Virus record (IMG/VR): IMGVR_UViG_3300023296_000874
Location: 186,001 to 250,000 of that record
DNA: 64,000 bases
Reading direction: 5' to 3' (one strand)
The notes beneath the pieces are model-generated. The model did not search any database. It saw only the letters and a program-made list of their open reading frames with translations, and was not told where the DNA came from. The translations under genes and the position numbers were made by a program. Below, one piece after another: positions 31,567 to 51,083 of this stretch (its first letter is position 1; every line of letters begins with the position of its first letter).

Positions 31567-32460
31567 TCAGCGGGTGATGCTCAGGCGGGTGAGGCCACGG
31601 GGGTTGAAAGCACCGATGCCGAGGTTCTCGAAGACGCTGAACCCGATGGTCCGGTTCTTCGGGTCGTCAGCACTGAGCACCGTGAGCTCGGTACGCACCG
31701 GGATGCGTCCGAAGTACTCAGGCTCGCAACACACGTACACGGTACCTGCGCTCACGAGTCGAGTCACGATGATCTGGGCTCCCCAGAGGTTCGCCTGGAG
31801 TCCGGTGCGCAGCAGTGCTGCCTGGCTCTCCATGTCGAGTACATCTCGGCCCCACTTACGGATGTCCGTGAAGTCGCGGGCGTTGATGAACACTCGAGCA
31901 ACGCGAAGGTCGTGTGCTTCGATCAGCGAGAAGGCGTCAGCCATCACGCTTGGAGTGATCGGAGCGGTGACGGTCACGTCAGCGTTCGTCTGGCCAGCCA
32001 GGTCGTCGAAGCCGGATACCGCAATGGCATCGAGCACCTGGAAGACGCGGGTGTCTTCCTCAACCTGAATGGCAACCTTCGCCAGGTCCTGGGCGCGTTC
32101 GATCAGATCGAAACGACGCTCCTTGATCTGGGTCAGGGGGATCTCGGGGTTGGTGGCGATCTCAAAGAGGGGGAAGATCACACGGCGCGGCTTGGTGATC
32201 GCGAGAATGTTCTCGCCTTCCTCACCAATGACGTACGCGGTCACGTCCGGGTCCTTGTCGTAGATCGGCAGTGCGCCGTCGGGGAGCTGCTCCACCAGGA
32301 AGGTCTTGCGGCCTACCGAGGTGTAGTCGCGCCGAGTACGGAGCGGCTGGATCATGGAAGCTGCCAGACGCTGCCTTCCGGCAGCAGTCTTGAGAAGCTC
32401 CGAGATCACCTGCTGCTTGGTAGCGTTGCTGATCTCTGGGTTCTGGGTGTTCACAGGCAT
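31567..32460 (-). CDS. Major capsid protein (HK97 fold)
   Basis: 297 aa; GRQRLAASMIQPLR..RDY..VGRK..LVEQLP.GALP.YD, PLFEIATNP, EED..VF; recalled resemblance to BpSp-like jumbo-phage MCPs; follows protease/scaffold/decoration. Confidence 0.9.
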   Translation of the reverse strand: MPVNTQNPEISNATKQQVISELLKTAAGRQRLAASMIQPLRTRRDYTSVGRKTFLVEQLPDGALPIYDKDPDVTAYVIGEEGENILAITKPRRVIFPLFEIATNPEIPLTQIKERRFDLIERAQDLAKVAIQVEEDTRVFQVLDAIAVSGFDDLAGQTNADVTVTAPITPSVMADAFSLIEAHDLRVARVFINARDFTDIRKWGRDVLDMESQAALLRTGLQANLWGAQIIVTRLVSAGTVYVCCEPEYFGRIPVRTELTVLSADDPKNRTIGFSVFENLGIGAFNPRGLTRLSITR

Positions 32461-32469
32461 GTCATCTCC

Positions 32470-33090
32470 TCAGATGCGAAGGTCGATCACCATGAAGGCG
32501 TCGGCCGAAGAAGGGGCCTGGAGCACAACGCCAATGACGGTGGCTTCGAGCACGGAGAATCCACCACTTACGTTCTCGTAAGTGTCTTCTGGAATTCCGG
32601 TCAGGATGCCGTTGTCAGATGCGTAGAGCCTCATGCCAGCGGTGTAGGTGATGGTGGCGTCGATCGCGACGGCAGTACCGTCGCTCAAAGTTCCACCGAG
32701 GGTCGAGACGTCCTCGTAGAGGTCCACCTTGTAGGTGCCTCCGCTGCAGACGTATGGTCCCTTCCCGCTGGCAATACCTGGAGTGTTCTCGTAGGCGTTG
32801 CCGACCGCGTCATTGATGAACAGTCCGAGCGGTACGTTTGCACCTGCCTCAGTCACAGCGGCACCTGCGGATGTGTATCCGGGTCCTCCGATGTAGTTCG
32901 ATCCGACGTCGGGTCGCGTGAAGGCTACAGATCCCCCGAGAACGCCGCTTGTGTTCACCTGGTTGGCCCAGGTAGTAGCGGTGTTCGCGGTATCAGCAGT
33001 AGGGCTCGAAGGGTTACTCTGAGTAAACGAATCCTCAGTAAGTACGCCCCAGGAGTTCCGGTGACCTGGGTATCTAATGTCCAGTGCCAT
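32470..33090 (-). CDS. Head decoration / capsid cement protein
   Basis: Between scaffold and MCP; PLGLFINDA, G..LYAS.NGILT, VIGVVL..P pattern. Confidence 0.7.
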   Translation of the reverse strand: MALDIRYPGHRNSWGVLTEDSFTQSNPSSPTADTANTATTWANQVNTSGVLGGSVAFTRPDVGSNYIGGPGYTSAGAAVTEAGANVPLGLFINDAVGNAYENTPGIASGKGPYVCSGGTYKVDLYEDVSTLGGTLSDGTAVAIDATITYTAGMRLYASDNGILTGIPEDTYENVSGGFSVLEATVIGVVLQAPSSADAFMVIDLRI

Positions 33091-33150
33091 GTTATTGCTC
33101 CGAATGGGTTGAAAGCCTTTATAGGTTTTACGAAAACACTTATGTGTCGT

Positions 33151-33168
33151 GCCCTGCTTGCGCGGGGC
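33151..33168 (-). terminator. GCAA-tetraloop hairpin after the scaffold gene
   Basis: Minus strand gccccgc-GCAA-gcagggc (one mismatch). Confidence 0.4.
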
Positions 33169-33188
33169 AAAGTCTGATCAGCTCAGGA

Positions 33189-34415
33189 TCAGCGGAAGTC
33201 CCCACTCACGTCGGGATCGCTCTTCCAGAGCTTGCTGAGGTCGCCAAGTCCGTTCTCGGATGCTGTCTTGGAAACGCCACCCAGCTTGGCTACGCCGCGC
33301 TTGGGTGCGGAAGCAGTCTTGCCTGCCTCAGCGGATGCGAAGATGTCGTTCAGCATGTCGCCCTCGGGGAGGGTGTCCATTGCCGGAGGAGTCAGCTCAA
33401 TCTCGAGGCCGGAGTCCAGAAGCGGGGTGGCAACCACCTCGGCGGCGAGGGCGTCGGCAGTGGCGTCGGCAGCTACGGAAGCTTCCTTGTCCTCACCCTT
33501 GTCCTCTTCCTTCTCGTCCTTGTCGTCGTCCTTGTCATCCTTGTCGTCGTCCTCGTCATCGGAGGCAACGGTCAGGGTGTCAAGTCCAGCGGTCAGGGCG
33601 GCAAGGCGGTCCTCTACGGATGCCTCCTTGCTCTCTTCCTCTTCCTTCTCGTCCTCGTCGTCGCCAGCACCCTTCTCGAGGGTCGCAAGGCGAGCCTCAA
33701 GAGCGGCAATCACGTCGCCGTGTGCAGAGGCGTCAGAGGCGCTCTTGATGGAGTCGAGCTCGGTACGGAGGGTGTTCAGGGCGGAAGCTTCCTTGCCGTC
33801 CTCTTCCTTCTCGTCCTTCTCGTCGTCGGTGGCTACAACGGCAGAAGCTTCCTTCTTGTCGTCGCCCTCGTCCTCATCCTTCTTGCCCTTCTGGTGCTTC
33901 TTGAAGGCATCGGGCACTTCACCCGCACCAACGATGCGAGCAATGGTAGCGTCGAGGCTACCGGGTCCCATGTTCATGAAGTCGCGAGCCTGGTTCTGGA
34001 TGAACCCTTCGTCGCCTTCGGGGAACATGGCGTGTGCCAGGTGGAGAGCCTTGTGGGCCAGCTTGCGGGCACCCTCAAAAGCTGCCTGCCGGTCGGCAGA
34101 AGCCTGCTTGAGCGCCTCGTCTGCTGCAGCCTTGTCATAGGAGGGCGGGATCTGCTCCCGGTCCTTCCATGTGCTGTCCAGGAAGTTGCCAAGGCCAACC
34201 TCGTTCCGTCCCTTCTCGTACTCCTGCTTCCAGGTGTCGACGGGCTGAACATCTTCTGCCCAGGAACTCGGGTTGCCATTCTCGTAGTGCGTCACAGAGG
34301 GCTCAGATCCAGGGCGTCGCTCCTGATTCATGAGGTAAGGGTCAGCCGACTTCCCAAAAGAGCCGGTCTTGGGGTTGTAGCCCCGCTCCGTGAGCCGCGT
34401 GCGTGTGTCGGCCAT
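33189..34415 (-). CDS. Capsid scaffolding/core protein (acidic, repetitive)
   Basis: D/E/K low-complexity tracts with coiled coils; 8 KxAS motifs; lies between protease and MCP. Confidence 0.75.
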   Translation of the reverse strand: MADTRTRLTERGYNPKTGSFGKSADPYLMNQERRPGSEPSVTHYENGNPSSWAEDVQPVDTWKQEYEKGRNEVGLGNFLDSTWKDREQIPPSYDKAAADEALKQASADRQAAFEGARKLAHKALHLAHAMFPEGDEGFIQNQARDFMNMGPGSLDATIARIVGAGEVPDAFKKHQKGKKDEDEGDDKKEASAVVATDDEKDEKEEDGKEASALNTLRTELDSIKSASDASAHGDVIAALEARLATLEKGAGDDEDEKEEEESKEASVEDRLAALTAGLDTLTVASDDEDDDKDDKDDDKDEKEEDKGEDKEASVAADATADALAAEVVATPLLDSGLEIELTPPAMDTLPEGDMLNDIFASAEAGKTASAPKRGVAKLGGVSKTASENGLGDLSKLWKSDPDVSGDFR

Positions 34416-34457
34416 GATATTTGCCTCCGAAAGGTTGTCCAACTCGGACGATAGGGG

Positions 34458-34473
34458 CTACAAAAGGATTATG
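34458..34473 (-). promoter_or_regulatory. Conserved 16-bp motif (consensus copy)
   Basis: ctacaaaaggattatg, 43 nt upstream of 34415. Confidence 0.75.
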
Positions 34474-34509
34474 AGAGTCTCGAGAGGAGATGGAGTGCAG
34501 CCCAGTACT

Positions 34510-34839
34510 TCATCTCTTCTTCATCCACGGGTACTTTCTATGTACCCCTCTGCTGCGCTGTCGCTTTCTGTATCTCTTAGTCGAAGGCTTGCGCTCAATA
34601 CGCTCCCGCCTACGCTTGTACTTCTTGCCCGCTGGTGTACGCGTCCATCGCCTGCGCTTTCTGCGCTCGTTCGACGGCTTGCGACGCCAGCGTGTCTTCC
34701 TCCGAATGCCACGGCGCTTGCCTGCATCGGATCGAGGTTTCTTTGCCGTCACATCGCTCGCCAACTCCATCATTTCCGTGCCCAGCTCGATGCTGTGCAT
34801 GGCAAGACGGATGGCGAGGCTGGTCAGGCATACTTTCAC
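34510..34839 (-). CDS. Protamine-like very basic protein
   Basis: 41 of the last 77 residues are K/R; GTG overlaps the protease TGA; fills the gap to the next promoter. Confidence 0.6.
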   Translation of the reverse strand: MKVCLTSLAIRLAMHSIELGTEMMELASDVTAKKPRSDAGKRRGIRRKTRWRRKPSNERRKRRRWTRTPAGKKYKRRRERIERKPSTKRYRKRQRSRGVHRKYPWMKKR

Positions 34840-36323
34840 TCAGGGGAGCCGTAGCTGAAGAGGTTTCCCTTGTAGATGAGCTGTCGGGCTACATCCATGG
34901 GGATCTTCCGGATTCCCGCTGCCTTGCCAATGGCATTGAGGTAGTCGAGTGGTGATTCAAAAGGTCCGGTGCCGCCTACCTTCGAGATGGCCTCGTTGGC
35001 TCTACGGCTAAGGGTCTCACCGCCGCGCTCGGCGTCAATGAAGTGGCTCAGGGCCAGGATCTCACGTCCGGAGAAGCCCTTGTCGGAAAGGCTCTTCCAA
35101 CCGGCAGTCTTGACACTCACCAACCCCTCGTAGAGGCGGTAGAGCATCAGGTCGCCACCGTAGCCAGCGTATCGGCTCTTGAAAGCGGAGAAGGCAAAGG
35201 TGCTGCGCACCAAGTTCTCGTTTCCGTTTTCCTTGCCGGTGTCTTGCTTGCCCTTCTCAACTCCACGCATCTCGTCACGGAGCTGGTTCCGTACCTGATC
35301 GCGGATCACCTGCTTCATGTCGTCGGTGATGTCGTCAATGGGGCTCTTGTCCGGTGTCGCGGGCGCTGCGGGCTTGTCCTCGCCGCCTTCCCCGTCTCCA
35401 CCATCGCCGCCCGCATCGTCGAAGTTAAAGCCACCCTGGCGGTGTACGAAGCTCTCAACCTTGTTGAGCGCTGCCTGTACCTCCGTGAGGTCAGAAGCGG
35501 CACGCTGCATAGCGTCTGCGTCCACAACGTTCACGGTCTCGAACGCAGCCTTGATGGTCTCAGCACTCACATCAGCGGCTTCCAGGATGTTCCGCATGAC
35601 GGCACCCTTGAAGGCTGGGTTGCCTACCCACGAGGCCTCAATGAATGTGACGCTGTCCTCATCATCCTTGTGGCCGCAGAGCTCGGCAATCTTGCGACGC
35701 TTACCCTTCTTGTCGAAGAAGTGGTTGCCCTTCATGTACTTGATGTGCTCGCACATCTGAGTATCGTCTTCAGCTACGTTTCCACACTTCGTGCAGACGG
35801 TGTAGTCAACCGTGCAACCCATGGAGAGGGTCGTGATCTCGCCACTCTTGATGTCCCGTACCAGGTCCTTGTGCTTGCGGTCCGTGGCTACGAGGATGTC
35901 AACGTAGACGGTCTCGCCAAGGTCGCGGGCTACTGCGTCAACAATCTTGCCCTTGCTCAGCTCGGGAATTTGAATGTGCTCAACGTAGTTCTCTGCACCA
36001 CGGAAGGTTCCGTAGGTGGCGAGGAGCAGGTCACGCTCCCAGGCATCTTCGTTGTTGTTGACGTACTTCTCAGTCTTCGCGGTGATCACGAAGGGCCAAC
36101 CACGGTCGTTGACGGGAGAAGCTTCTACGTCAACAGAGGCGATGATCGTGCAGTGCGTGAGAAGGAACTTCTCTGGGTTGTACTTGCTGGCGATCATGTC
36201 CGCGCCAGCCTGTCGGCTCATCTTGGAGCTGCCCGTCATGCCGTCCTTGCGAACAGCGGTCCAGTCATCAGCCTCGAGAGAGTGCCGAACAATCTTCGCC
36301 TTTGCGTATCGAAGCATTGACAT
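34836..36323 (-). CDS. Prohead (maturation) serine protease with Zn-finger insert
   Basis: NNNEDAW, NYVEH (His), TLSMGC (Ser), CTKCG...CEH, FIEASWVGNPAF. Confidence 0.75.
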   Translation of the reverse strand: MSMLRYAKAKIVRHSLEADDWTAVRKDGMTGSSKMSRQAGADMIASKYNPEKFLLTHCTIIASVDVEASPVNDRGWPFVITAKTEKYVNNNEDAWERDLLLATYGTFRGAENYVEHIQIPELSKGKIVDAVARDLGETVYVDILVATDRKHKDLVRDIKSGEITTLSMGCTVDYTVCTKCGNVAEDDTQMCEHIKYMKGNHFFDKKGKRRKIAELCGHKDDEDSVTFIEASWVGNPAFKGAVMRNILEAADVSAETIKAAFETVNVVDADAMQRAASDLTEVQAALNKVESFVHRQGGFNFDDAGGDGGDGEGGEDKPAAPATPDKSPIDDITDDMKQVIRDQVRNQLRDEMRGVEKGKQDTGKENGNENLVRSTFAFSAFKSRYAGYGGDLMLYRLYEGLVSVKTAGWKSLSDKGFSGREILALSHFIDAERGGETLSRRANEAISKVGGTGPFESPLDYLNAIGKAAGIRKIPMDVARQLIYKGNLFSYGSPE

Positions 36324-37825
36324 TAGCTACTCCTCGGAGTGCGGAGGTGGTCAAGTACATCCACGAGGCGGTTGTACGCTTCGCGGTTGAAGAGCCCGTC
36401 AGCGGTGTTGGCGCTGAGCAGGAAGAGTGCATCCCCGAAACCGTGGGTCTCAAGGTCATGGTGGAACTGGTCTGCCAAAACAGGCGAGGCGGTTCCGTCA
36501 CGTACCTCTTCATATAGAAGGTTCATGCCATCTGAACCGAGTACCTCTCGAAGCTCAATGGCTGAGGGGTTCATGCTGGCAACTACGCGCTGGAAGCCTA
36601 CTGCGTAGCGGGCATGTCGGTCAGCGTCGATGTCCTTCTGTACGCCAATCAGCCGTCCAATCTCCCTATCATCCACATCGAGCAGCTCACTTACCGAAAG
36701 GTCGGCAACGTAGGAGTAGATGCCCTCAATGGCTTCATCCGTGTAGTGGAACTGGTCTGCCTCGTCCATCACAGCCTTTCGGATGCGGACGCCAAGGCTT
36801 CCCTTGTGGCGGTTGAAGACGGAGCCATGTCCAACCAAGGAGTCGCGGAGCAGCTCGTAGAGCTCTTCGTCCGCTTCCTTCTTGAGCTGTCGCGTGGGTA
36901 GCTCATCCTCGTGAACGTGCATGTCACCCGAGTGGAGTCCCACTACGCCGGTTGCAGCGTCATTGTGGTAGATCTCGTGGTCCGGATGGTTCTTCTTCAG
37001 GTACGCAAGCACCTGGTTCTTCAGCGCGTCCCACTTCGAGTTCTTCTGAGTCGCAGCCGCAGTCTTCAGCGCCGCAAGGAGCATGTCGTCTTCGGCACCC
37101 GGAGGCACTCCGAACCCACTCTCCTCCACGTACCCAGGAAGCCCCTCGATGTCTGAGGGCTTGATACAGAACAGGCATTCGGGACACACGAAGAGGCGGG
37201 TGTGCTTCTTGTAGTTGGTCTTCTGGAGGTTCGCCCCACACTTGGGGCAGTCGGGCAGGCCGTCATCGAGCTCCCGCCGATTCATGCGGTACCTGCGTCC
37301 GGGGGCTGTCCAGTAGATTGCTTGGCGTACACTGTGGTCCGGGGCCTTGCACACGGAGGTGATGGCTCGGAAGCTGTCGACGCGGCTCAGGCCCTTGAAG
37401 GCACACTGCTGGGCCATTACCTGGAGCTTGGCTTGGGCGTCGAAGTAGTGAGCAGCGAGATGCTCTGCGCGGTCTACAAAAGGAGCCGCTGAGGCTCTCT
37501 TGGGCCAGGCGTAGCTGTATCCAACGGCGGTGCCGTCTTCAATGTGGCTCTGCGCAATGTCGTAGCTGCTGTAGGAGGTGTCGTACTGCGGCGGGATCGT
37601 GCGAACGTAGTTCGGGTTCGCGATCACCAGCTCATCCGCACTCACACGCTCATTGCCCCATGGGAACTCAGCGTCAACGAATCCGATTCCGGGGTGTACG
37701 GCGGTCACCGTCCCACTCACATCGGAAGCCCCCCCGTCGAGGCTGTTCCTTCGGTAAACGACGTCGCCTCTTGCGAAGTTCTTCGCCAAGAGCCAGTAGT
37801 CAACGAATGCTTTCTTGTCAGCCAT
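36323..37825 (-). CDS. Head-operon protein with SH3-like N-domain and Zn ribbon
   Basis: FARGDVV...GTVTAVHPGIGFVDAEFPWG; CPKC...CPEC; TAATG coupling to the protease. Confidence 0.6.
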   Translation of the reverse strand: MADKKAFVDYWLLAKNFARGDVVYRRNSLDGGASDVSGTVTAVHPGIGFVDAEFPWGNERVSADELVIANPNYVRTIPPQYDTSYSSYDIAQSHIEDGTAVGYSYAWPKRASAAPFVDRAEHLAAHYFDAQAKLQVMAQQCAFKGLSRVDSFRAITSVCKAPDHSVRQAIYWTAPGRRYRMNRRELDDGLPDCPKCGANLQKTNYKKHTRLFVCPECLFCIKPSDIEGLPGYVEESGFGVPPGAEDDMLLAALKTAAATQKNSKWDALKNQVLAYLKKNHPDHEIYHNDAATGVVGLHSGDMHVHEDELPTRQLKKEADEELYELLRDSLVGHGSVFNRHKGSLGVRIRKAVMDEADQFHYTDEAIEGIYSYVADLSVSELLDVDDREIGRLIGVQKDIDADRHARYAVGFQRVVASMNPSAIELREVLGSDGMNLLYEEVRDGTASPVLADQFHHDLETHGFGDALFLLSANTADGLFNREAYNRLVDVLDHLRTPRSS

Positions 37826-40147: not shown

Positions 40148-41752
40148 TCAGAAGCGCTCTTCCCCCGCGCTCTCCTTGATTTTCAGTCCAAGGTGCTCAA
40201 CGACGATATCCAGAAGGTTGGATTTCTCCGCGAGCTGTCCGCCAATGTCACCCAAGGCGTTTCGAATCGCCTCGTTGAAGTTGGCGTCATTGAGCGTGAA
40301 TGCATCGCGCTGGAGCTTCTCTTCCACGTCAGCAGCGTCGATGTTGAAGAGGTCGAGGATGAAGCTCACGGGCAAGCTTCCCTTCTGGTACAGGTCGAAC
40401 AGGGCGCTGAAGACGTCCTGGTTGTCGGCCAGTGCCATACGGTTGAAGCTCAGGCGCGGGTAGATGGGCTTGTCGTATCCCCACGCATCCTTCTCCACGA
40501 ATCCCATCTTGATTGCTACGGGCTTGAAGAGGAAGTCCTCAACGTACTCCTGAACCATCATGCGGTAGTTCATGAAGCGCTCGTTCATGACGTGCAGGCT
40601 CAACCGGTTGCCGGTGAACGTACCTTCGCCAGTGAGCAGCTCGAGCGTCACGCCAAGGCCAACCATGAGCTGACGGTCCGTGATGTCGTACTCGTTGCTC
40701 AGGTCAAGCAGGCGGTCGTTGCTACCGTACTCTTCCCAGTTCACCTGGTAGTTGGCAACAATGGAGAAGTCAGGGTCCATCAGGGCAAGGTCCACCATCT
40801 CGCGGAGCTCATCAACCTGCATTTCGTCAAGCCCCTCTCCCCACACGACGCGCTTCGGGGTCATGTTGCGGCTTGCGATACTTGTCTGAGCCTGACGTAG
40901 CTTGTCGCGGTACAGCAACACGCGCAGGCACCGTTCCAAAATGGAGGAGCCAAACTTGCTGCGAGGCCTACGCCTACGAGCAAGGTGGTAGCAGAAAGAG
41001 CCCTGCATGGGATCGGAGTCCAGGGGGAGGTTCTCTCCCATCTGGATGTACTCCACGATCTCGGGCGGCATCTTCTCAACCTTGCGCATGGCAAGGGGGT
41101 CAACCTGGGCGTCACGCACGGCGCGACGGTCTTCTTCCGAGGGTACGAACTCGATGTCTACTTCGTCGGAGAAGCTGTAGCCCTTGACGTCAACCTGATC
41201 GGTCTCAAGGATGGTGAGCTTGCGCCACCCACGGTAGTCTTCGCCTTCCTTGTCATCGTCCTCAGCGAAGATGAAGACGTTGCCGTCCAACCAGTAGAGG
41301 TGCGTGATCTCGTGCAGGCGTCGTGTGAGCCTGAGATCATCCACCATCTTCTGAAAGTAGGCCATCACCTTGTCAGCGGTCTCCTTGTCCTCACATTTCG
41401 GCTTGGAGAGGCGGACCTTGCTCAAGGGGATCTCGGTCAGGATGTCGAGTGCCTGCCCAACCATGGGGTCAGTCTCGTAGTAGTGCCTGAACCACTCGTG
41501 CTTCTCACGGTCACTCTGAGGCAGCTCGAGGAAGTCCGTGCTGAGCTGAGGGCTGAAGAAGTTGAATCCAGAGCTCTGGATTACACCACCACCCGGAGCA
41601 CCAACACGAGTGTTGAACTGTACGCCATTGGTGGAGCGGGCAACACGCTTCAGACGTCGAGCGATGACTTGATCATTGCCACGTCGGGAGATTGTGGGTC
41701 CGGGTGCCGGAGCACCAGATCCACTACTTTCGTTGTTGTTGTCGTCAGGCAT
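40148..41752 (-). CDS. Portal protein
   Basis: 534 aa between TerL and protease; YYETDPMVGQALDI, YWLDGNVFI, GSSILERCLR.L...DKLRQAQ.SIA.R..TP, GLGVT..LL.GEG. Confidence 0.85.
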   Translation of the reverse strand: MPDDNNNESSGSGAPAPGPTISRRGNDQVIARRLKRVARSTNGVQFNTRVGAPGGGVIQSSGFNFFSPQLSTDFLELPQSDREKHEWFRHYYETDPMVGQALDILTEIPLSKVRLSKPKCEDKETADKVMAYFQKMVDDLRLTRRLHEITHLYWLDGNVFIFAEDDDKEGEDYRGWRKLTILETDQVDVKGYSFSDEVDIEFVPSEEDRRAVRDAQVDPLAMRKVEKMPPEIVEYIQMGENLPLDSDPMQGSFCYHLARRRRPRSKFGSSILERCLRVLLYRDKLRQAQTSIASRNMTPKRVVWGEGLDEMQVDELREMVDLALMDPDFSIVANYQVNWEEYGSNDRLLDLSNEYDITDRQLMVGLGVTLELLTGEGTFTGNRLSLHVMNERFMNYRMMVQEYVEDFLFKPVAIKMGFVEKDAWGYDKPIYPRLSFNRMALADNQDVFSALFDLYQKGSLPVSFILDLFNIDAADVEEKLQRDAFTLNDANFNEAIRNALGDIGGQLAEKSNLLDIVVEHLGLKIKESAGEERF

Positions 41753-43658: not shown

Positions 43659-45470
43659 TCAAAAGAACTTGCGCTTGCGCACGTACATGTTCTTGCGTGC
43701 TTTCTTGAGCTGGTGCGAACGGTGTGTGGAGTAGCCCTTGCCGTTCCCACGTAGTCCGGGGTTCCGGTTGCTCATGCCGTGAACCACTCGAGCGAACTTC
43801 TTGTCGCCAATGCGTTCCTGAGCGAGCCAAATGGCGCGGGCCAGGGCGTCAGCCTGATCGTCGAACCTGCCAGGCAGGTTGGGAGCAGCCACCTCAATCT
43901 GGTACTTGCTGAGGCGCTTCTCCTGAAGGCTGAGCAGCTCTTTGATGTAGTCGCAGTGCTCGTCCCCCTCTTCAATGGGCCAATCGAACAGGCGGATCTT
44001 CTTGTCGAGCATCAGGAGCTTGAAGGCTTGGTACTTCTTGGAGTTCTTGTCGCGGCTGGCGTACTCCATCTCAAACTGCTGGAGTCCGCGCTTGCGGAGT
44101 GCCTGCTCAAGAGGAAGGCCTTCTCGCTGGTCAAAGGAGCCGCGCCAGATGTAGAACTTCTTGCTCAGATCGAAGATCCACTGCGCAATACTCTCGAAGT
44201 CAAGCTGGTCCATGTCCTTGTAGGGGCCAACGCCAGCGTACCGAACGTCCATGTAGTCGAGTACGATCTGGTCGCCCTCAAGATGTACGATGGAGATCGC
44301 CGTACCGTTGTTGACAAGCCCGATGTCAACGCCCATGAAGTGAGGTACGCGAGTAGCGCCGCCACCACGGGGTCGGAGGTCAGGGTCGATGCACTGGAGC
44401 AGGTCGTCTTCCCTGCGGATCCAACCGTGGAGTCGGTCGGAGAACTCAGCTCCGAACTCAACGAGGAAGTTGGCGGGGTCTTCCTTGTACTTCTTGCGGA
44501 GGTACTTACCTGCAATCGTGGGGTTGATCTCCCACGAAGGTGCCTGGATGCAGAGGCGTCCTTCAGAGCGGCCCTCCATTCCCTGCGTGAACAGCTTGTA
44601 GAACTTCCCGGCCTTGTTGAGCGGCGAGGAGATGCAGATCACCTTTCCCTCAGGCTCGCCCGTTTTGGGGTCCTTGAAGGTAGCCGTCGAAGGCGTTGCG
44701 GCCTCGTAGCACTCTTCAGCGGAGCTCTGGCCCTCTGCCACGAAGTGAGCAAACTCGTCGAACACGCATACGATGTTGGCGGGTCCACGGAGGCCTCGTC
44801 CAATAGCCGGACGGAACAGGAGCTCGATGGATCCCTTGGCGTCCGGGCCGTAGCGGTCAATGTCGGCCTGGGTACGGAACACCATGCCTTCAGCGGTGTC
44901 ACTGGCAATGAACGGCTCGAAATAGCGGCACTTCGTCAGGTAGCCGCGCGCCACGTTGTAGAGCATGGAAGCCTGGCGGGCGCTGGTTGCTACAGCACTG
45001 ATGCTGATGCGGCCCACTTCGAGCATCTTGTAGTGGTCGTGCGGATTCACGCGGGCAAGGAGCTTGTAGATCTCGTAGGCGCAGATCATCGAGGTCATTG
45101 CTGACTTAGAGCCACGGCGTCCAACCGACAGGAGGAGGTCGGTGTAGATCTCGCCCTGCTCCTTGACGTTGCAGCGCCCCTCGTTGTGAAGGTAGCGGAG
45201 GAACTCCTTCTCGCTGAGCTCGTACTTCAGTTCCATCATGAACTGGTCGTGTACGGGAATGCCGTGGAAGAGCTTTCCGTCGAGCATCACCTCAGGCTTC
45301 TCAATGCTGAGAGGTACGCCGTAGAACAGCTTGAGTAGCCAACGCTGAGCGGGCCAGAGTCGAGTGTTGAGTCCCCAGGTTGACTCGCAGAACGTGACGA
45401 TGTCAACGAAGTCCTCGTTGTCCTTGTCAGGCTTGCTGAACTCCTGGAGGATGGAGGTAACTGTGTTCAT
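43659..45470 (-). CDS. terL: Terminase large subunit
   Basis: LWPAQ (Q motif), VGRRGSKS (Walker A), CVFDEFAHF (Walker B), ISSP, FMGVDIG and DDQADA nuclease acidic residues. Confidence 0.92.
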   Translation of the reverse strand: MNTVTSILQEFSKPDKDNEDFVDIVTFCESTWGLNTRLWPAQRWLLKLFYGVPLSIEKPEVMLDGKLFHGIPVHDQFMMELKYELSEKEFLRYLHNEGRCNVKEQGEIYTDLLLSVGRRGSKSAMTSMICAYEIYKLLARVNPHDHYKMLEVGRISISAVATSARQASMLYNVARGYLTKCRYFEPFIASDTAEGMVFRTQADIDRYGPDAKGSIELLFRPAIGRGLRGPANIVCVFDEFAHFVAEGQSSAEECYEAATPSTATFKDPKTGEPEGKVICISSPLNKAGKFYKLFTQGMEGRSEGRLCIQAPSWEINPTIAGKYLRKKYKEDPANFLVEFGAEFSDRLHGWIRREDDLLQCIDPDLRPRGGGATRVPHFMGVDIGLVNNGTAISIVHLEGDQIVLDYMDVRYAGVGPYKDMDQLDFESIAQWIFDLSKKFYIWRGSFDQREGLPLEQALRKRGLQQFEMEYASRDKNSKKYQAFKLLMLDKKIRLFDWPIEEGDEHCDYIKELLSLQEKRLSKYQIEVAAPNLPGRFDDQADALARAIWLAQERIGDKKFARVVHGMSNRNPGLRGNGKGYSTHRSHQLKKARKNMYVRKRKFF

Positions 45471-46838: not shown

Positions 46839-47174
46839 CTACTGAGTGGGTTCTACGCCGCCCGTTGATTGCTCAGCGGAGGGTCCGGGGGGAGGTGTAC
46901 CTGTCTGGTACTCGCTCGGGATGTTGTATCGGGCAAGGTTGGAGATGTCATCGTAGAGGGGATGGTCTTCAATCTCACTGAGGCGCTTGTCCTCGTGATC
47001 CTCCCCCTCAATACCGTCCCGAGAGTCCTCAAGCATCTTCTGTACTTGCTTGCCTTCCGATTGGAACAGCTCACGCTCATGCTGGGGAATGTCAGAATCG
47101 TCGACGAGTCCGTCGCCGTACTCGGGCGCGGCCTGAATCAAACGGGCGAGGCGGTGTAGGCGGTCAGAGATCAA
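46839..47174 (-). CDS. Small hypothetical late protein
   Basis: RLHRLARLI leader; overlaps the upstream stop. Confidence 0.55.
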   Translation of the reverse strand: MISDRLHRLARLIQAAPEYGDGLVDDSDIPQHERELFQSEGKQVQKMLEDSRDGIEGEDHEDKRLSEIEDHPLYDDISNLARYNIPSEYQTGTPPPGPSAEQSTGGVEPTQ

Positions 47175-49810
47175 AAGAGCTCTCCCATGGGATCGTCGAA
47201 CCCAACGTCAAGGTCAACGGCTTCCGCTTCAGCGTTGTAGTCCACGTCGAGGTAGCCTCCGAGGCCGTACTCCAACGAGGGGTCAATACCTACGGGAGTA
47301 GGGTTGCTGAGCTCCTGTGTCACGGTAGGCATCTCAGGTACCTCTGCCACAACCTGTCGGTCGTACACCTGGCACCTGTTGTTCGCGCTCTTGAACACAC
47401 ATCCGCTGCACTTACCCATCGCCTTCACGTAGGGAGCGGGGCTGTCTGCAACCTGCTTGGCACCCTGGTCACATGCGTTGTAGGGGCGGGGGTCGATGTA
47501 GTGCGCGCCAATGCCTCGGCCATCATCAACCAGCGCCTGCCGGAGGAAGTTGGCCTCGCTGTTGTAGAGCTCGGGGCTGAAGCTGTTCCGAATCCAGCTC
47601 TGAAGTCCGGAGCCCGTAACGCCACGGTTCATCGCCATCACAACACGCTTCCTGAAGGAAGTACGCTGGGTGGAGCTGATGCGGGCGGGGCGACTCTTCC
47701 GAACCACGCTGGCATCCACGGTGGGTACATCAACGTCGCCGGGTGCGCGTACATTCACCTTCAGGTCAGCCATGGAGGCCACGAACTTGCGGTCGGCTTC
47801 AGCCTTCTTGTACCGAGCGTAGCGCTCCTGCTCCTGAGCGAGGTCACGGAGTACCTGCTGGCGAGTGCTTGTGCGCTCCTCAACCTGCTGCTTCGCTTCC
47901 GCAGCCTTCTCGGTGGAGATCGTGTCGGCCTCTACCTCACGGTCGATCAGAGCCATCAACGCGGAAGCGATGCGGGCTTCCTCTCTCTGCGCGGCGGTGC
48001 GGAACTGGTCCTGTACCTGCTTCTTGGTCACCTGCGGGGTGGATACACGGGCAACACGCTCAGGTCCTGCAATAGCAGCCGGGCGCGGGCTCATGTAGGC
48101 AGCCTGAACGATGTCCCAGGAGTTGGTCGATCCAACCAAAGTACGCAGTTCGAGTGCGCGTTCCGAGCTGATTCGCTCATTCATCTCGAGCTTGTCAACC
48201 GCCTCACTCGCCTCAATCTCAAACTGGCCGATGCTGCCGTAGTTGATGAGGGTCAGTGCCGGGAAGTCGCGTGCGGGGTCGGGAGCAGAGCTCGGCCCGC
48301 CACATGCGCCGCCACAGCCTTCCTTGAGGAGGAACTGAGGGTGGAGCCGGTTGTCGGTGAGGAAGTTCTTGGCCTCGCTGGCGCTACGGAACCCACGCAC
48401 ATCGAGCACCACGTTTCCGAGCAGTCCGGCCATCCGAACAATCGGTCGGATGTGGCTACCCGCTGCAACCACAGCAGGGGCACCGAAGCGCTCTACCAAG
48501 TGGTTCTGGAGTGCGCTGCCGTGAACACCCTTGTACGCCGCCTGGTAGGCAGAGCGCACGACGCTGGCGTGCTTCTGAGGGATGGCATGTGAGATGGTCG
48601 CAGCCTTGGCATCTACTACCTGCTGCTGGGTCTGCATCTGCTGAGCGTCATACTTCGGCTGGTAGTCAGCTACCTCAACCGGAGCAAGTACGCCGTGAGC
48701 CTCTGCGAGGAGGTCCCGAACATCCACAGAGCCAATGCGGCTCAGGATACCTTCGGCTGTTTTGGCGTCGAGCGTCCCTGCGTCACGGAGCTGAGCCACC
48801 TCAGCGGCGAGCACCTCTTCGGTGTAGGGAATGTCCTTCACCACCTGCTTCCCAATGAGGGAGCAGCCGCCTTCGCGGTTGAAGTGGCAGCCACTGCACT
48901 TGTCCATCTCAAGGATGAACTCAGCGGCGTTGTGGTGACGGCGGAAGAAGTCGTTGGCGTCGTGGCATGTGCGGAACTGGTCCGGGCGCACGTAGACGCT
49001 ACCCAGGAGGTTCTGCTCAGAAGCGAGGGTAGTGATGGCATCGCTGTCCGCGCGGGCAAACCGACGCTCAAGGGAGGCACTCAGACGTCCCTTCGCAGCC
49101 ATCATCTTCTGGCTGAGGTCCCTGTAGAGGGAACGCTCAACGGCGCTCTGGAAGTCAGCGCTCGGCGGCTCGTACTTGCCGGAGGCACGTCGGTCACGCG
49201 CTACCTGGGCATTCGCATCTTCCGTCACGTGCGTGCGGAGGTCACTCGAGTTGTAGTCGCGGTGCGTGCGGATGGGCTGAGCGAGGAAGGCATTGAGTTG
49301 GTCGTTCTCTTCCGGCACGGCAGGCAGGTCAAGGCGAGCGTGATACTCGTCAATCGCACTACCGTCCTGCACCTCGAAAGTCACGTCGCGCTGCATCTGT
49401 CCGAGCATGGCGTGCTCGTTGGCAACGCTCTGTAGCGTCGGTACCAGCATAGCAATGTGGTCTGGGTGAACGTTCTCACGTACCCACGCGGCAAGCTTCG
49501 GTGCGTCCCAACCGGCGTGAAGGCGGTCCTTCACAGCGCTCGATACGAGGTTGCGTAGCTCAGCATCCTCCATGTGCTCTGTCGATGCCCACTTGTGCTC
49601 GCGCACGGTGTCGGGATCAAGAGCAGGAACACGGTGGACCGTGCCCATGTCGTGATGCGTCCAGGCATCTACGAGGTCAGGGACAGCGTCAAGGTTCTGC
49701 CGGGGCAGTCTCTCAACATGGCGGTAAGCCTCTTCATCTACGTCAAGCCAGTCCAGGTTCGGGACGGGGTTTTCGAAGATGTGGGAGAGATCTCCGGGCT
49801 GCTTGGGCAT
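47171..49810 (-). CDS. Large head-associated protein with repeated Cys-rich domains
   Basis: Two full and one degenerate LG..Y.DP..F..C...A........KCSGC.F....C....Q.V..P repeats; GGAG RBS before ATG 49810. Confidence 0.65.
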   Translation of the reverse strand: MPKQPGDLSHIFENPVPNLDWLDVDEEAYRHVERLPRQNLDAVPDLVDAWTHHDMGTVHRVPALDPDTVREHKWASTEHMEDAELRNLVSSAVKDRLHAGWDAPKLAAWVRENVHPDHIAMLVPTLQSVANEHAMLGQMQRDVTFEVQDGSAIDEYHARLDLPAVPEENDQLNAFLAQPIRTHRDYNSSDLRTHVTEDANAQVARDRRASGKYEPPSADFQSAVERSLYRDLSQKMMAAKGRLSASLERRFARADSDAITTLASEQNLLGSVYVRPDQFRTCHDANDFFRRHHNAAEFILEMDKCSGCHFNREGGCSLIGKQVVKDIPYTEEVLAAEVAQLRDAGTLDAKTAEGILSRIGSVDVRDLLAEAHGVLAPVEVADYQPKYDAQQMQTQQQVVDAKAATISHAIPQKHASVVRSAYQAAYKGVHGSALQNHLVERFGAPAVVAAGSHIRPIVRMAGLLGNVVLDVRGFRSASEAKNFLTDNRLHPQFLLKEGCGGACGGPSSAPDPARDFPALTLINYGSIGQFEIEASEAVDKLEMNERISSERALELRTLVGSTNSWDIVQAAYMSPRPAAIAGPERVARVSTPQVTKKQVQDQFRTAAQREEARIASALMALIDREVEADTISTEKAAEAKQQVEERTSTRQQVLRDLAQEQERYARYKKAEADRKFVASMADLKVNVRAPGDVDVPTVDASVVRKSRPARISSTQRTSFRKRVVMAMNRGVTGSGLQSWIRNSFSPELYNSEANFLRQALVDDGRGIGAHYIDPRPYNACDQGAKQVADSPAPYVKAMGKCSGCVFKSANNRCQVYDRQVVAEVPEMPTVTQELSNPTPVGIDPSLEYGLGGYLDVDYNAEAEAVDLDVGFDDPMGELF

Positions 49811-50003: not shown

Positions 50004-50548
50004 CAGAGCTCACCATCACGTGCTTCGAGGTACTCGTTGTACCCTTCGATGAGCCTTCGTGCTGTCCCATCCACAAGGGATTCGGTACCGGTCAGAAGGT
50101 GGTCCATCAGCTTGGTCAAACCGCGTGGCGATAGCGCCCCTGTACCAAGGATACTGAGTTCAAGTGCGGATGCGTGAACTGCGTCTTCTACTACCTCAAG
50201 CGCCAGTGCTGGTGCATGTACGGCGAAGAAGTCTCTACTCTGATTCTTTCGGATGGTCTGTGTGAGCGCTCTATTGAGGTGCGCGTTCAATCTTGAAGTT
50301 GCAAGTACGAGCACGCTGCTTCTGAGCTCTGCGTCGAACAGAGTATCGAACTGGTCATCAGCACCCGTGAGGTTGCGCTTCAGGATTGCTCCCTCGTCGT
50401 CCTCGATGTCACCCCGACCCTCGTCCTCGTTCCAGGAGCCGTAGGGGCCTGGGCCGTAGCCACGCTCACGAACGGCGGGTCCGGACTGCGGCTGTGTGCC
50501 GAAGCTCCGTTCCGAAACCATTCCGCCCCATGCCTTACGATCCTTCAT
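50003..50548 (-). CDS. Hypothetical protein
   Basis: Operon-filling ORF; ATG at 50548. Confidence 0.55.
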   Translation of the reverse strand: MKDRKAWGGMVSERSFGTQPQSGPAVRERGYGPGPYGSWNEDEGRGDIEDDEGAILKRNLTGADDQFDTLFDAELRSSVLVLATSRLNAHLNRALTQTIRKNQSRDFFAVHAPALALEVVEDAVHASALELSILGTGALSPRGLTKLMDHLLTGTESLVDGTARRLIEGYNEYLEARDGEL

Positions 50549-51083
50549 TGACGATCTCCTCAATGAACTCGTCTTCGGCGTAGCCCTCGGGGTCTTCCTT
50601 GATCTCCTCTACGTCCTCGATGATCTCCTCAACCTGCTCCTTCTGCTTCTTGGGTAGGTTGTCCTTGATCTCACGCCAGTGCGGGGCGTTCACCTCGTCG
50701 AACAGGGTGTCCTGCACTCCGCTCAAGGTGTTCAATGCGTTGGTCAGCTCCGCACGCATGTCGGTGACGCTCTTGTTGTAGCCCATGCCCCCGAGCTTGC
50801 CGTCAGGGGAGAGGTTGAAGCTCTTGATCCGGCTGAAGGTGTCAACCACGGAGCTTGTGTGGCCGAGTGCAACTGATACCTGCCAGAGCAGCTTGGTCAA
50901 GGTGACATAGTCTTCCTTGCGGAAGTTGTGGTTCTCAAGGAAGTCTCGGCCTGCGCTGAGGTTGTCCTTGATGTGGCGAATTTCACCTGCGGTTCGCATC
51001 AGCGAAGCACTGCGCTCCAGCGGAGTCTCAATGAACTCTGCTGCCAACTTCTCTGCCGCCGCGATGTCGTCGAAATCAGACAC
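50535..51083 (-). CDS. Hypothetical protein
   Basis: GAGGTGG RBS before GTG 51083; AEKLAAEF leader, RSAS/RTAG motifs. Confidence 0.6.
   Translation of the reverse strand: MSDFDDIAAAEKLAAEFIETPLERSASLMRTAGEIRHIKDNLSAGRDFLENHNFRKEDYVTLTKLLWQVSVALGHTSSVVDTFSRIKSFNLSPDGKLGGMGYNKSVTDMRAELTNALNTLSGVQDTLFDEVNAPHWREIKDNLPKKQKEQVEEIIEDVEEIKEDPEGYAEDEFIEEIVNEGS

What the first reader, a model, noticed from the sequence alone, without database searches (positions are those of the whole stretch)
33189..36323. K/R-x-A-S/A/G: candidate new prohead-protease cleavage code
Seen: the scaffold has KxAS 8 times (KQAS, KEAS x4, KSAS, KTAS x2), usually right after an acidic tract. Similar sites punctuate other late proteins, often at domain borders: MCP LKTAAG (about residue 25), protease RQAG/RAAS/KTAG, 36323 KRASA/KTAAA, 38621 RKAST, 26487 KKASS/RAASAG, 47171 RRASG/RTAA, 50535 RSAS/RTAG, Dps protein KQASS, InPase RVASD, and NTase RTAG/RVASA. 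Established: T4 gp21 and phiKZ gp175 cut head proteins at short motifs ending in Glu. Inference: this protease instead recognises basic-x-Ala, fragmenting the scaffold and releasing cargo domains. Caveat: Ala and Arg are common in high-GC proteomes, so only the scaffold enrichment is self-evident.
Basis: partly seen in the sequence, partly recalled or inferred. Interest (0 to 1): 0.75.

Follow-up and report, generated by a model that had tools for sequence, protein, structure and literature searches.

The report
Basic-x-Ala-Ser head protease cleavage motif
A short motif (Lys/Arg, any residue, Ala, then Ser) is about ten times over-represented in the head-scaffold proteins of this jumbo phage and its many uncultured relatives, and is most likely the cutting site of their herpesvirus-like head-maturation protease, so mature virion proteins could be predicted from sequence alone.

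Summary
The scaffold (33189-34415, minus strand) has 8 KxAS against 0.33 expected. It ranks first of 317 genome proteins.

The same motif recurs in every syntenic scaffold of 35 diverged relatives: [KR]xAS 188 against 17 expected. The reversed motif scores 1.1x, and shuffles within local windows never exceed 35. The motif is sharply defined: K/R, then x (K, T, L, Q or V preferred), an invariant Ala, then Ser (Ala or Gly tolerated, Thr not).

The neighbouring 493-aa protein has an assemblin/T4 gp21 protease fold (Z 10.4-10.7). Across 96 family representatives the motif is enriched 6-7x on both flanks of the catalytic domain and depleted to 0.3x inside it.

In the capsid protein, the clade-invariant K/R-L-A-A-S aligns with the N-terminus determined by sequencing for mature phage G capsid protein. 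This places the cut after Ala.

The best reading is [KR]-x-Ala|Ser/Ala/Gly, a basic-P3 variant of the herpesvirus x-Ala|Ser code. Glu-type codes are at expectation.

No cleavage has been shown experimentally.

The parts
33189..34415 (-). Scaffold protein gene (408 aa from the ATG at 34415). Conserved N-terminal region, central acidic/helical region, conserved C-terminal tail.
   Evidence: Lies between protease and decoration-like/MCP genes in every relative. No Pfam or PHROG family. 8 KxAS against 0.33 expected.
34098..34109 (-). Scaffold site 1, KQAS (residues 103-106)
33843..33854 (-). Scaffold site 2, KEAS (188-191), after an acidic tract
33783..33794 (-). Scaffold site 3, KEAS (208-211), after an acidic tract
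33735..33746 (-). Scaffold site 4, KSAS (224-227)
33618..33629 (-). Scaffold site 5, KEAS (263-266), after an acidic tract
33477..33488 (-). Scaffold site 6, KEAS (310-313), after an acidic tract
33309..33320 (-). Scaffold site 7, KTAS (366-369). Aligns with the conserved 'PQPR-x-AS' site of relatives.
33258..33269 (-). Scaffold site 8, KTAS (383-386). Conserved last site, 23 residues from the C-terminus; candidate analogue of the herpesvirus maturation (M) site.
   Evidence: The last site lies 21-26 aa from the C-end in 28 of 35 scaffold clusters.
33192..33260 (-). Conserved scaffold C-terminal tail (residues 386-408, ...LSKLWKSDPDVSGDF), the best-conserved part of the scaffold. Inferred to bind the capsid protein.
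   Evidence: 62% identity over the last 34 aa against 26-35% elsewhere. The function is an inference.
34836..36323 (-). Head-maturation protease gene (493/495 aa): N-terminal propeptide, catalytic domain, acidic linker, helical C-terminal domain.
   Evidence: phrog_18299 head maturation protease E 4e-13. Fold matches.
35532..36185 (-). Protease catalytic domain (about residues 45-262) with a Cys-rich zinc-ribbon-like insert. Invariant H55, H114 and S165 (S-M-G) are candidate catalytic residues.
   Evidence: Model pLDDT 93. VZV assemblin Z 10.7, T4 gp21 Z 10.4. Invariant columns. The catalytic roles are inferred.
36204..36215 (-). RQAG (protease residues 35-38) in the N-terminal flank; candidate self-cleavage site.
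   Evidence: 69 of 96 family representatives have the motif in the N-flank, 7.0x expected.
35493..35504 (-). RAAS (protease residues 272-275) just after the catalytic domain; candidate analogue of the release (R) site.
   Evidence: Aligned [KR]-[KA]-A-A-[RS] column in relatives. 70 of 96 have the motif within 60 aa after the domain, 5.6x expected.
31567..32460 (-). Major capsid protein gene (297 aa, HK97 type).
   Evidence: phrog_2522 E 2e-55. About 80% identical in 455 IMG/VR contigs.
32359..32370 (-). RLAA (MCP residues 31-34, followed by S35). Predicted maturation cut after A33, removing a 33-residue propeptide.
   Evidence: K/R-L-A-A-S is invariant in 80 loci. It aligns with phage G A27|Q28, the sequenced mature N-terminus.
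32380..32391 (-). Not conserved, so probably not the functional site.
   Evidence: Relatives have KTPQG, KTASG or KTPTG here.
47171..49810 (-). 879-aa Cys-rich protein of unknown function; possible further substrate (weak).
   Evidence: 10 sites against 2.98. Homologues have 6-10 against 2-3, except one with a single site; many sites lie in conserved context.

Best explanation
[KR]-x-Ala followed by Ser (less often Ala or Gly) is the recognition site of this phage's own head-maturation protease. The protease is a serine protease of the herpesvirus-assemblin/T4 gp21 fold, and it cuts after the Ala.

Proposed sequence of events after the procapsid has formed around the scaffold:
1. The protease frees its catalytic domain by cutting in both flanks (window RQAG at residue 35, RAAS at 272).
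2. It cuts the 408-aa scaffold at up to 8 strict sites into pieces of 16-105 residues. This includes detaching the conserved 23-residue C-terminal tail, which probably holds the scaffold to the capsid protein, as the herpesvirus M-site cut does.
3. It removes 33 residues from the capsid protein (R31-L32-A33|A34-S35).

Shown here: the motif, its enrichment and depletion pattern, its positional conservation, the protease fold, and the alignment to one sequenced N-terminus. Inferred: that this protease is the enzyme, that the scissile bond is Ala|Ser at every site, and the role of the tail.
For: 1. **Enrichment.** The scaffold has 8 KxAS against 0.33 expected and is the top protein of the genome.
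2. **Independent replication.** All 35 scaffold clusters below 60% identity, taken by synteny from IMG/VR relatives and barely alignable to the window's, carry the motif. Pooled [KR]xAS is 188 against 17 expected. The reverse motif is 1.1x, other permutations are 1-4x, and shuffles within 15-60-aa windows never exceed 35.
3. **Sharp definition, typical of a protease subsite.** K/R 10-12x, Ala 11x with every other residue at or below 1.7x, Ser 11x, Ala 2.7x, Gly 2.3x, Thr only 1.5x.
4. **Fold.** Foldseek gives KSHV and pseudorabies assemblin probability 0.99-1.0 and T4 gp21 0.94. VIA gives VZV assemblin Z 10.7 and gp21 Z 10.4, and the first 33 entries are all assemblins or gp21. PHROG annotates a head maturation protease.
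5. **Signature of self-processing and self-protection.** In 96 diverse family members, motif density is 7.0x in the N-flank, 0.3x inside the catalytic domain, and 5.6x in the 60 aa after it.
6. **Depletion in retained shell proteins.** The decoration-like neighbour is depleted to 0.43x. The mature part of the MCP has 0 sites in 61 orthologues against 39 expected, although these sequences are closely related.
7. **Link to experiment.** Phage G MCP (37% identical) is 282 aa and 255 aa when mature, by N-terminal sequencing (PMC5646251). That equals a start at Q28 and 28.17 kDa. G's A27|Q28 aligns with R-L-A|A-S in the window and with the invariant K-L-A|A-S of the clade.
8. **Conserved site positions.** The last scaffold site lies 21-26 aa from the C-end in 28 of 35 clusters, upstream of the conserved tail. 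Sites recur at the N-terminus and after the first helix.
9. **Cultured relative Tunturi_5.** Scaffold 9 against 2.3, an 827-aa 'DNA ejection protein' 14 against 3.1, and MCP KLAAS.
10. **Glu-type codes are at expectation.** [LI]xE 1.04x and [SAG]xE 0.97x.
Against: - No cleavage product has been observed for this phage or any close relative.
- The only experimental anchor is one N-terminus in a 37%-identical protein. There P3 is Ala, not basic (VALA|Q).
- The phage G scaffold candidate gp21 has no such motif at all, so the code is not uniform across the wider family.
- Actinophage relatives show only weak enrichment (9 against 4.3 and 7 against 2.8), and their aligned MCP site is R-L-G-Q.
- The catalytic residues and a pocket that would select a basic P3 could not be inspected.
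- The protease-peptide co-fold gave no answer.
- The MCP depletion rests on closely related sequences.
- The four KEAS units in this scaffold sit in loosely repeated DNA.
Confidence: 0.7

Rival explanations
1. The motif is a short linear motif with a non-proteolytic role. It could be repeated docking sites for the capsid protein or the protease, helix-capping signals at the start of scaffold helices, or phosphorylation sites (basic at -3 of Ser resembles basophilic kinase sites).
For: Several sites are followed by predicted helices. [KR]-[KR]-x-S-like strings such as RKAS and RRAS are common. Conservation alone does not reveal the function.
Against: Thr does not substitute for Ser (1.5x), whereas Ala and Gly do (2.3-2.7x). 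That fits a small-P1' protease pocket and fits neither a kinase nor an N-cap. Ala is obligatory at the preceding position. The motif also flanks the protease domain and is depleted inside it and in shell proteins. One aligned site is a known cleavage point in phage G.
Confidence: 0.12
2. The phage protease recognises the motif but cuts at another bond, for example directly after the Lys/Arg as in the HK97 Lys|Ser cleavage.
For: The HK97-family protease is remembered to cut after Lys103 of gp5 (own knowledge, not checked here). The basic residue is one of the two strongest positions of the motif.
Against: Phage G's mature length of 255 aa and mass of 28.2 kDa fit a start at Q28, after Ala27. 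A cut two residues earlier would give 257 aa and 28.35 kDa. Plain K-S dipeptides are at expectation (1.09x). Assemblin-fold enzymes of herpesviruses take Ala at P1 (PMC4498786).
Confidence: 0.08
3. A host protease, not the phage enzyme, recognises the motif.
For: Host proteases process capsid and scaffold proteins in some phages (own knowledge: staphylococcal 80alpha-type phages).
Against: The motif co-varies with presence of this protease family across relatives of very different origin, including an Acidobacteria isolate and diverse metagenomes. It brackets the protease's own catalytic domain and is avoided within it.
Confidence: 0.05
4. The enrichment is an artefact of composition or internal repeats: a Lys/Ala/Ser-rich, repetitive scaffold produces the tetrapeptide by chance or by duplication.
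For: The acidic tracts and the KEAS units lie in loosely repeated DNA. The scaffold is low-complexity.
Against: Shuffles within 15-60-aa windows give 17-21 (maximum 35) against 188. The reversed motif is at 1.1x. The enrichment recurs in 35 scaffolds that are not alignable in the repeat region, and in the non-repetitive flanks of the protease.
Confidence: 0.02

Closest known systems
Herpesvirus assemblin (MEROPS S21; HSV UL26, CMV UL80, PrV pUL26N) with its release (R) and maturation (M) sites
   Same: Same protease fold (VZV Z 10.7, PrV Z 10.3, KSHV Foldseek probability 1.0). Ala at P1 and Ser/Thr at P1' (PrV YLQA-T and VQA-S, PMC4498786). One site lies just after the protease domain and another about 20-40 residues before the scaffold C-terminus, ahead of a conserved tail. 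In actinophage relatives the protease and scaffold are one polypeptide, as in UL26 (Myrna gp97, E3 gp77).
   Different: P3 is Lys/Arg here rather than the aliphatic Val/Leu/Ile of herpesviruses; [VLI]xAS is only 1.66x. There are many sites per scaffold (median 5) rather than one. Protease and scaffold are separate genes in the window. The catalytic domain carries a Cys-rich insert. There is no detectable sequence similarity.
T4 gp21 and phiKZ gp175 / SPN3US gp245 prohead proteases (Glu-ending motifs: L/I-x-E, A/S/G-x-E)
   Same: Same fold (T4 gp21 Z 10.4). Same logic of a short motif that is cut many times in scaffold/internal proteins and once at the MCP N-terminus, with self-cleavage of the protease (PMC10052503).
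   Different: The specificity is unrelated: Glu-type motifs are at expectation in these scaffolds (1.04x and 0.97x).
Bacillus phage G head module (gp19 protease, gp27 MCP)
   Same: Homologous MCP (37%) and protease. The sequenced mature N-terminus (255 of 282 aa, PMC5646251) aligns with the predicted cut. The G protease has KTAA, KVAS and KIAS at the same flanking positions (4 against 0.72).
   Different: The G cleavage site is V-A-L-A|Q, with no basic P3. Its scaffold candidate gp21 has none of the motif.
HK97 gp4 protease (MEROPS S78, Pfam PF04586) acting on the gp5 delta domain
   Same: HK97-type capsid protein trimmed at its N-terminus by a phage-encoded protease of the same structural superfamily.
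   Different: No Pfam match to the S78 family. The scaffold is a separate protein, not a delta domain. The HK97 cut after Lys (own knowledge) is not mirrored here.

Membership tests
Assemblin / prohead serine protease structural superfamily (herpesvirus S21, T4 gp21 S77) | Characteristic beta-barrel protease fold | tested here: met
   Domain model pLDDT 93.3. Foldseek: KSHV 1.00, PrV 0.99, T4 gp21 0.94. VIA: Z 10.7, 10.4, 10.3; the first 33 entries are all this family.
Assemblin / prohead serine protease structural superfamily | Catalytic Ser with His partner(s) in the active site | tested here: inconclusive
   H55, H114 and S165 (in an S-M-G motif) are invariant in 27 and 97 sequences. Model coordinates could not be inspected, so the geometry is unverified.
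Assemblin / prohead serine protease structural superfamily | Sequence membership in a curated family (Pfam Peptidase_S21, S77, S78, S80) | tested here: not met
   No Pfam family for the protein or for 27 relatives, even at E <= 1. No PDB sequence match. Only PHROG 18299 and 2774 match.
Herpesvirus-type cleavage code (aliphatic-x-Ala|Ser) | Ala at P1, Ser at P1' | not testable with these tools
   Inferred from the motif scan and from alignment to the sequenced N-terminus of phage G. No cleavage data exist for this phage.
Herpesvirus-type cleavage code (aliphatic-x-Ala|Ser) | Aliphatic residue (V/L/I) at P3 | tested here: not met
   K/R at that position is 10-12x enriched; V is 2.4x and L 1.2x. 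[VLI]xAS is 1.66x.
Herpesvirus-type protease-scaffold organisation | Protease fused in frame to a scaffold protein, with an R-site between them and an M-site near the C-terminus | tested here: inconclusive
   The genes are separate in the window. The protease has its own helical C-terminal domain and a conserved site after the catalytic domain. A true fusion exists in Myrna gp97 and E3 gp77. The scaffold's last site lies 21-26 aa from the C-end.
T4 / phiKZ Glu-specific prohead protease code | Substrates carry repeated (L/I or A/S/G)-x-Glu motifs | tested here: not met
   [LI]xE is 1.04x and [SAG]xE 0.97x of shuffled expectation in 35 scaffolds.
HK97-fold major capsid protein with an N-terminal propeptide | Capsid family match and a processed N-terminus | tested here: met
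   phrog_2522 E 2e-55. Pfam Phage_capsid scores 19.8 bits, below the 24.2 cut-off. Homologous to phage G gp27, whose processing is documented. Processing in this phage is inferred.

The most novel reading that the evidence does not exclude
An Ala|Ser scissile-bond preference is an ancient, shared property of assemblin-fold capsid proteases, linking herpesviruses with a very large clade of mostly uncultured jumbo and huge phages (at least 1,900 protease clusters at 50% identity). In this clade it has been retuned by a basic P3. The motif is then a readable 'maturation code' that also marks packaged or ejected internal proteins, such as the 879-aa protein here and the 827-aa Tunturi_5 protein, so the mature head proteome of uncultured huge phages could be predicted from sequence.
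Probability: 0.3. Interest if true: 0.75.

Novelty: new variant of a known kind. Interest (0 to 1): 0.62.

Why it matters
**What is new.** Cleavage rules of phage head proteases are known for only a few model systems: T4, the phiKZ/SPN3US group, and HK97. All were found by laborious proteomics. Here a sharply defined rule emerges from sequence statistics alone, for a protease family that serves hundreds of huge-phage lineages, almost all of them uncultured.

**If it is confirmed**, the rule would:
- predict the mature ends of the capsid protein, scaffold fragments, protease and possibly internal proteins across that clade;
- give a concrete parallel in substrate rule, not only in fold, between phage and herpesvirus capsid proteases;
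- provide a ready assay (protease plus scaffold in E. coli) and a cultured test organism (Tunturi_5, phage G).

**If it is wrong**, the motif remains one of the most strongly selected short linear motifs seen in phage structural proteins and would need another explanation.

Tried and rejected
**Searches and jobs that gave nothing usable**
- tblastn of the scaffold against 50,697 phage records found no match. Relatives were reached by synteny through the MCP instead.
- The DNA search of the module found only LR745208.1, a 485-kb uncultured phage.
- The profile search of the protease against PDB sequences gave only noise.
- Pfam found nothing for the protease or for most neighbours.
- The first full-length protease model was poor (pLDDT 64). 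It gave only weak matches until the domain was folded alone with 97 sequences.
- The protease-domain plus scaffold-peptide co-fold returned 'no answer'. It counts neither for nor against.
- The search for related loci for the 879-aa protein found nothing. Seven homologues came from the protein search instead.
- The 879-aa protein is not similar to the Tunturi_5 827-aa protein.
- The phage G structure and proteomics paper (PMC7316594) is not held, so the exact N-terminal sequence could only be derived from the lengths and masses in PMC5646251.
- The Tunturi paper has no virion proteomics.
- Rfam found nothing in the protease-scaffold gap.

**Hypotheses rejected**
- Chance, composition or repeats.
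- A Glu-type code.
- Cargo release from enzymes.


Full report
**Context.** The window is bases 186001-250000 of a single 257,533-bp contig with 59.5% GC, that is, a jumbo phage.

The finding covers two minus-strand genes of the head module. In transcription order the module reads:
- a 500-aa protein (36323-37825);
- the protease (34836-36317/36323);
- a 420-bp gap;
- the scaffold (33189-34415);
- a 206-aa decoration-like protein (32470-33090);
- the major capsid protein, MCP (31567-32460).

The portal (40148-41752) and large terminase (43659-45470) lie upstream. The MCP matches phrog_2522 (E 2e-55) and the 493-aa protein matches phrog_18299, 'head maturation protease' (E 4e-13).

**The observation.** The scaffold contains KQAS, four KEAS, KSAS and two KTAS, exactly as reported.
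- Shuffles that keep composition give 0.33 KxAS, against 8 observed.
- They give 1.97 [KR]xA[SAG], against 12 observed.
- Among 317 proteins I called in the whole genome, the scaffold ranks first for both patterns.
- The next three for the loose pattern are the 879-aa protein at 47171-49810 (10 against 2.98), a 182-aa protein at 50535-51083 (3 against 0.27) and the protease (6 against 1.53).
- The rest of the proteome is at expectation, 164 against 155.

**Replication in relatives.** The MCP is about 80% identical in 455 IMG/VR contigs, many of them 200-620 kb. Gene order around it is conserved.

The gene between protease and decoration protein is only 26-35% identical to the window's scaffold in its N-terminal part. 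It is unalignable in the middle and 62% identical in the last 34 residues.

I took that gene by position from every locus and reduced the set to 35 clusters below 60% identity. Every one carries the motif, with 2-10 strict sites (median 5). Pooled counts are:

| Pattern | Observed | Expected |
|---|---|---|
| KxAS | 112 | 11.0 |
| RxAS | 76 | 6.1 |

Controls exclude composition and local bias. The reversed motif is at 1.1x and other orderings of the same residues are at 1-4x. Shuffling within 15-, 30- or 60-residue windows gives 17-21, never above 35, against 188 observed.

**Shape of the motif**.

| Position | Preference |
|---|---|
| 1 | K or R (10-12x); His 5x |
| 2 | K, T (about 18x), L, Q, V favoured; D, P, G avoided |
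| 3 | Ala only (11x; every other residue at or below 1.7x) |
| 4 | Ser 11x, Ala 2.7x, Gly 2.3x, Thr 1.5x |

Small residues can replace Ser but Thr cannot. That argues for a steric pocket (a protease P1') rather than a hydroxyl acceptor (a kinase site) or a helix cap.

**The enzyme.**
- A first full-length model was poor. Even so, its best structural matches were herpesvirus proteases and T4 gp21.
- A search of 1.84 billion representatives found 1,929 clusters of this protease domain.
- The domain folded with 97 sequences reached pLDDT 93.
- Foldseek then ranked KSHV and pseudorabies assemblins (probability 0.99-1.0) and T4 gp21 (0.94) first.
- VIA-align gave VZV assemblin Z 10.7, T4 gp21 Z 10.4 and pseudorabies Z 10.3. 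The first 33 entries all belong to this family.
- H55, H114 and S165 (in S-M-G) are invariant, and a Cys-rich insert is conserved. Their catalytic roles are inferred.

**Where the motif sits relative to the enzyme.** In 96 single-piece representatives of the family:

| Region | Motif density vs expected | Proteins with at least one site |
|---|---|---|
| ~45 residues before the catalytic domain | 7.0x | 69 of 96 |
| Inside the catalytic domain | 0.3x | 15 of 96 |
| First 60 residues after the domain | 5.6x | 70 of 96 |
| Rest of the C-terminal part | 3.1x | 74 of 96 |

In the 27-sequence alignment the flanking sites form recognisable columns. One is V-R-[VIT]-A-S-G near residue 25. Another is [KR]-[KA]-A-A-[RS] right after the domain, where the window has MQRAAS.

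Enrichment on the flanks with avoidance inside is what self-processing with self-protection predicts. The decoration-like neighbour is also depleted (0.43x). The mature part of the MCP has no site in 61 orthologues against 39 expected, although these sequences are closely related.

**The link to experiment.** Bacillus phage G has a homologous MCP (37% identity) and protease.
- Hua et al. 2017 (PMC5646251, Table 1) list its MCP as 282 residues and 31.2 kDa. By N-terminal sequencing the mature form is 255 residues and 28.2 kDa.
- The annotated protein computes to 31.19 kDa. A start at Q28 gives 255 residues and 28.17 kDa.
- The cut is therefore V-A-L-A|Q.
- In alignment this bond falls on R31-L32-A33|A34-S35 of the window and K-L-A|A-S of Tunturi_5.

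This places the scissile bond after the motif's Ala, as in herpesvirus assemblins (PrV YLQA-T and VQA-S; PMC4498786).

**Architecture of the scaffold sites**.
- The last site lies 21-26 residues from the C-terminus in 28 of 35 clusters. It sits just before the most conserved segment, ...LSKLW-x-SAPDVS-x-x-F.
- One or two further conserved sites lie 15-35 residues upstream (PQPR-x-AS; [KR]-[KT]-A-[SA]).
- Near the N-terminus most relatives have R-L-T-W-x-x-[KR]-x-A-S-A-P-P and M-L-G-[KR]-K-A-S.
- Sites are gained and lost between lineages, as short linear motifs are.

This mirrors the herpesvirus M-site, which detaches the scaffold from the capsid protein. That the tail binds the MCP here is an inference. 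If all eight strict sites of the window's scaffold are cut, the fragments are 105, 85, 20, 16, 39, 47, 56, 17 and 23 residues.

**Breadth and limits.**
- *Tunturi_5*, a cultured 309-kb phage of Acidobacteriota with 48% MCP identity, shows the pattern. Its scaffold has 9 against 2.3, an 827-aa 'DNA ejection protein' has 14 against 3.1, and its protease has sites on both flanks.
- *Phage G's protease* has four sites at the expected flanking positions (against 0.72 expected). Its scaffold candidate has none, and its MCP site lacks the basic residue.
- *Myrna and Rhodococcus phage E3* carry protease and scaffold as one 1,211- or 895-aa protein. Enrichment there is weak (9 against 4.3 and 7 against 2.8) and the sites cluster near the C-terminus.
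- *The 879-aa protein* is enriched in five of seven homologues, but many of its sites lie in conserved, probably folded context. I treat it as a weak candidate substrate.

The rule is thus strongest in the high-GC huge-phage clade and looks transitional further out.

**Other codes.** T4-type [LI]xE (1.04x), phiKZ/SPN3US-type [SAG]xE (0.97x; PMC10052503 for the A-x-E rule), K-S (1.09x) and aliphatic-x-A-S (1.66x) are not, or barely, enriched in the scaffolds. [KR]xAS is at 11x.

**Verdict.** The most likely meaning is a protease code, [KR]-x-Ala|Ser/Ala/Gly, read by an assemblin-fold head protease (confidence about 0.7). It is a variant of the known herpesvirus Ala|Ser rule with a basic P3, not a categorically new code. 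No biochemical evidence exists yet. The tests are simple and a cultured relative is available.

Noticed in passing
L035:5045-8014, L037:3120-5951, L039:4810-7566; proteins P0002, P0004 and many others: Many relatives' protease genes encode 900-1,500-aa proteins in which the protease domain is split into 2-4 pieces. Pfam finds Hint / intein-splicing and LAGLIDADG domains; P0004 appears to hold several inteins. The window's own protease has none.
   Followed up: partly
window 34416-34835 (ORF 34510-34839, minus strand): There is a 420-bp gap between protease and scaffold, where relatives have none. It holds a 109-aa ORF of extreme basicity (pI about 12, long Arg/Lys runs) and GC3 0.68. The ORF has no homologue in the held loci or elsewhere in the genome, and Rfam finds nothing in the gap. 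It may be a real small basic protein or non-coding DNA.
   Followed up: partly
window 36323-37825 and loci L001-L080 upstream of the protease: Only the first ~230 residues of the 500-aa protein upstream of the protease are conserved: a small beta-rich domain plus a CxxC...CxxC zinc ribbon. Relatives encode just that part (180-250 aa). In several loci it reads through in frame into the protease (738-1,165-aa ORFs).
   Followed up: partly
window 31567-32460 and 455 IMG/VR contigs: The capsid protein is about 80% identical across contigs of 200-620 kb from very different samples. Its neighbours (protease, decoration-like protein, scaffold) are only 26-50% identical. This is an unusually strong constraint on the shell protein.
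   Followed up: no
window 35532-36185 (protease residues about 165-215): The assemblin-fold catalytic domain carries an insert with invariant cysteines (C168, C175, C178, C189, C214), which looks like a zinc ribbon. I do not know of this feature in T4 gp21 or in herpesvirus proteases.
   Followed up: no
L083:2171-5806 (Mycobacterium phage Myrna gp97) and L084:6896-9583 (Rhodococcus phage E3 gp77): In these actinophage relatives the protease domain is the N-terminus of a 1,211- or 895-aa protein that lies where the scaffold would be, a herpesvirus-like protease-scaffold fusion. The Myrna record's note calls gp97 'tape measure', which looks like a misannotation.
   Followed up: partly
window 47171-49810: This 879-aa protein has no family match. 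It has several conserved CxxC pairs and seven metagenomic homologues (37-62% identity). It shows the second strongest motif enrichment in the genome; its function is unknown.
   Followed up: partly
window 34414-34441, minus strand: The only sigma-70-like promoter match in 33000-35000 (TGGACA-16-TATCAT, 10 of 12) lies directly at the scaffold start. It could allow separate, higher expression of the scaffold relative to the protease. It is a consensus match only.
   Followed up: no
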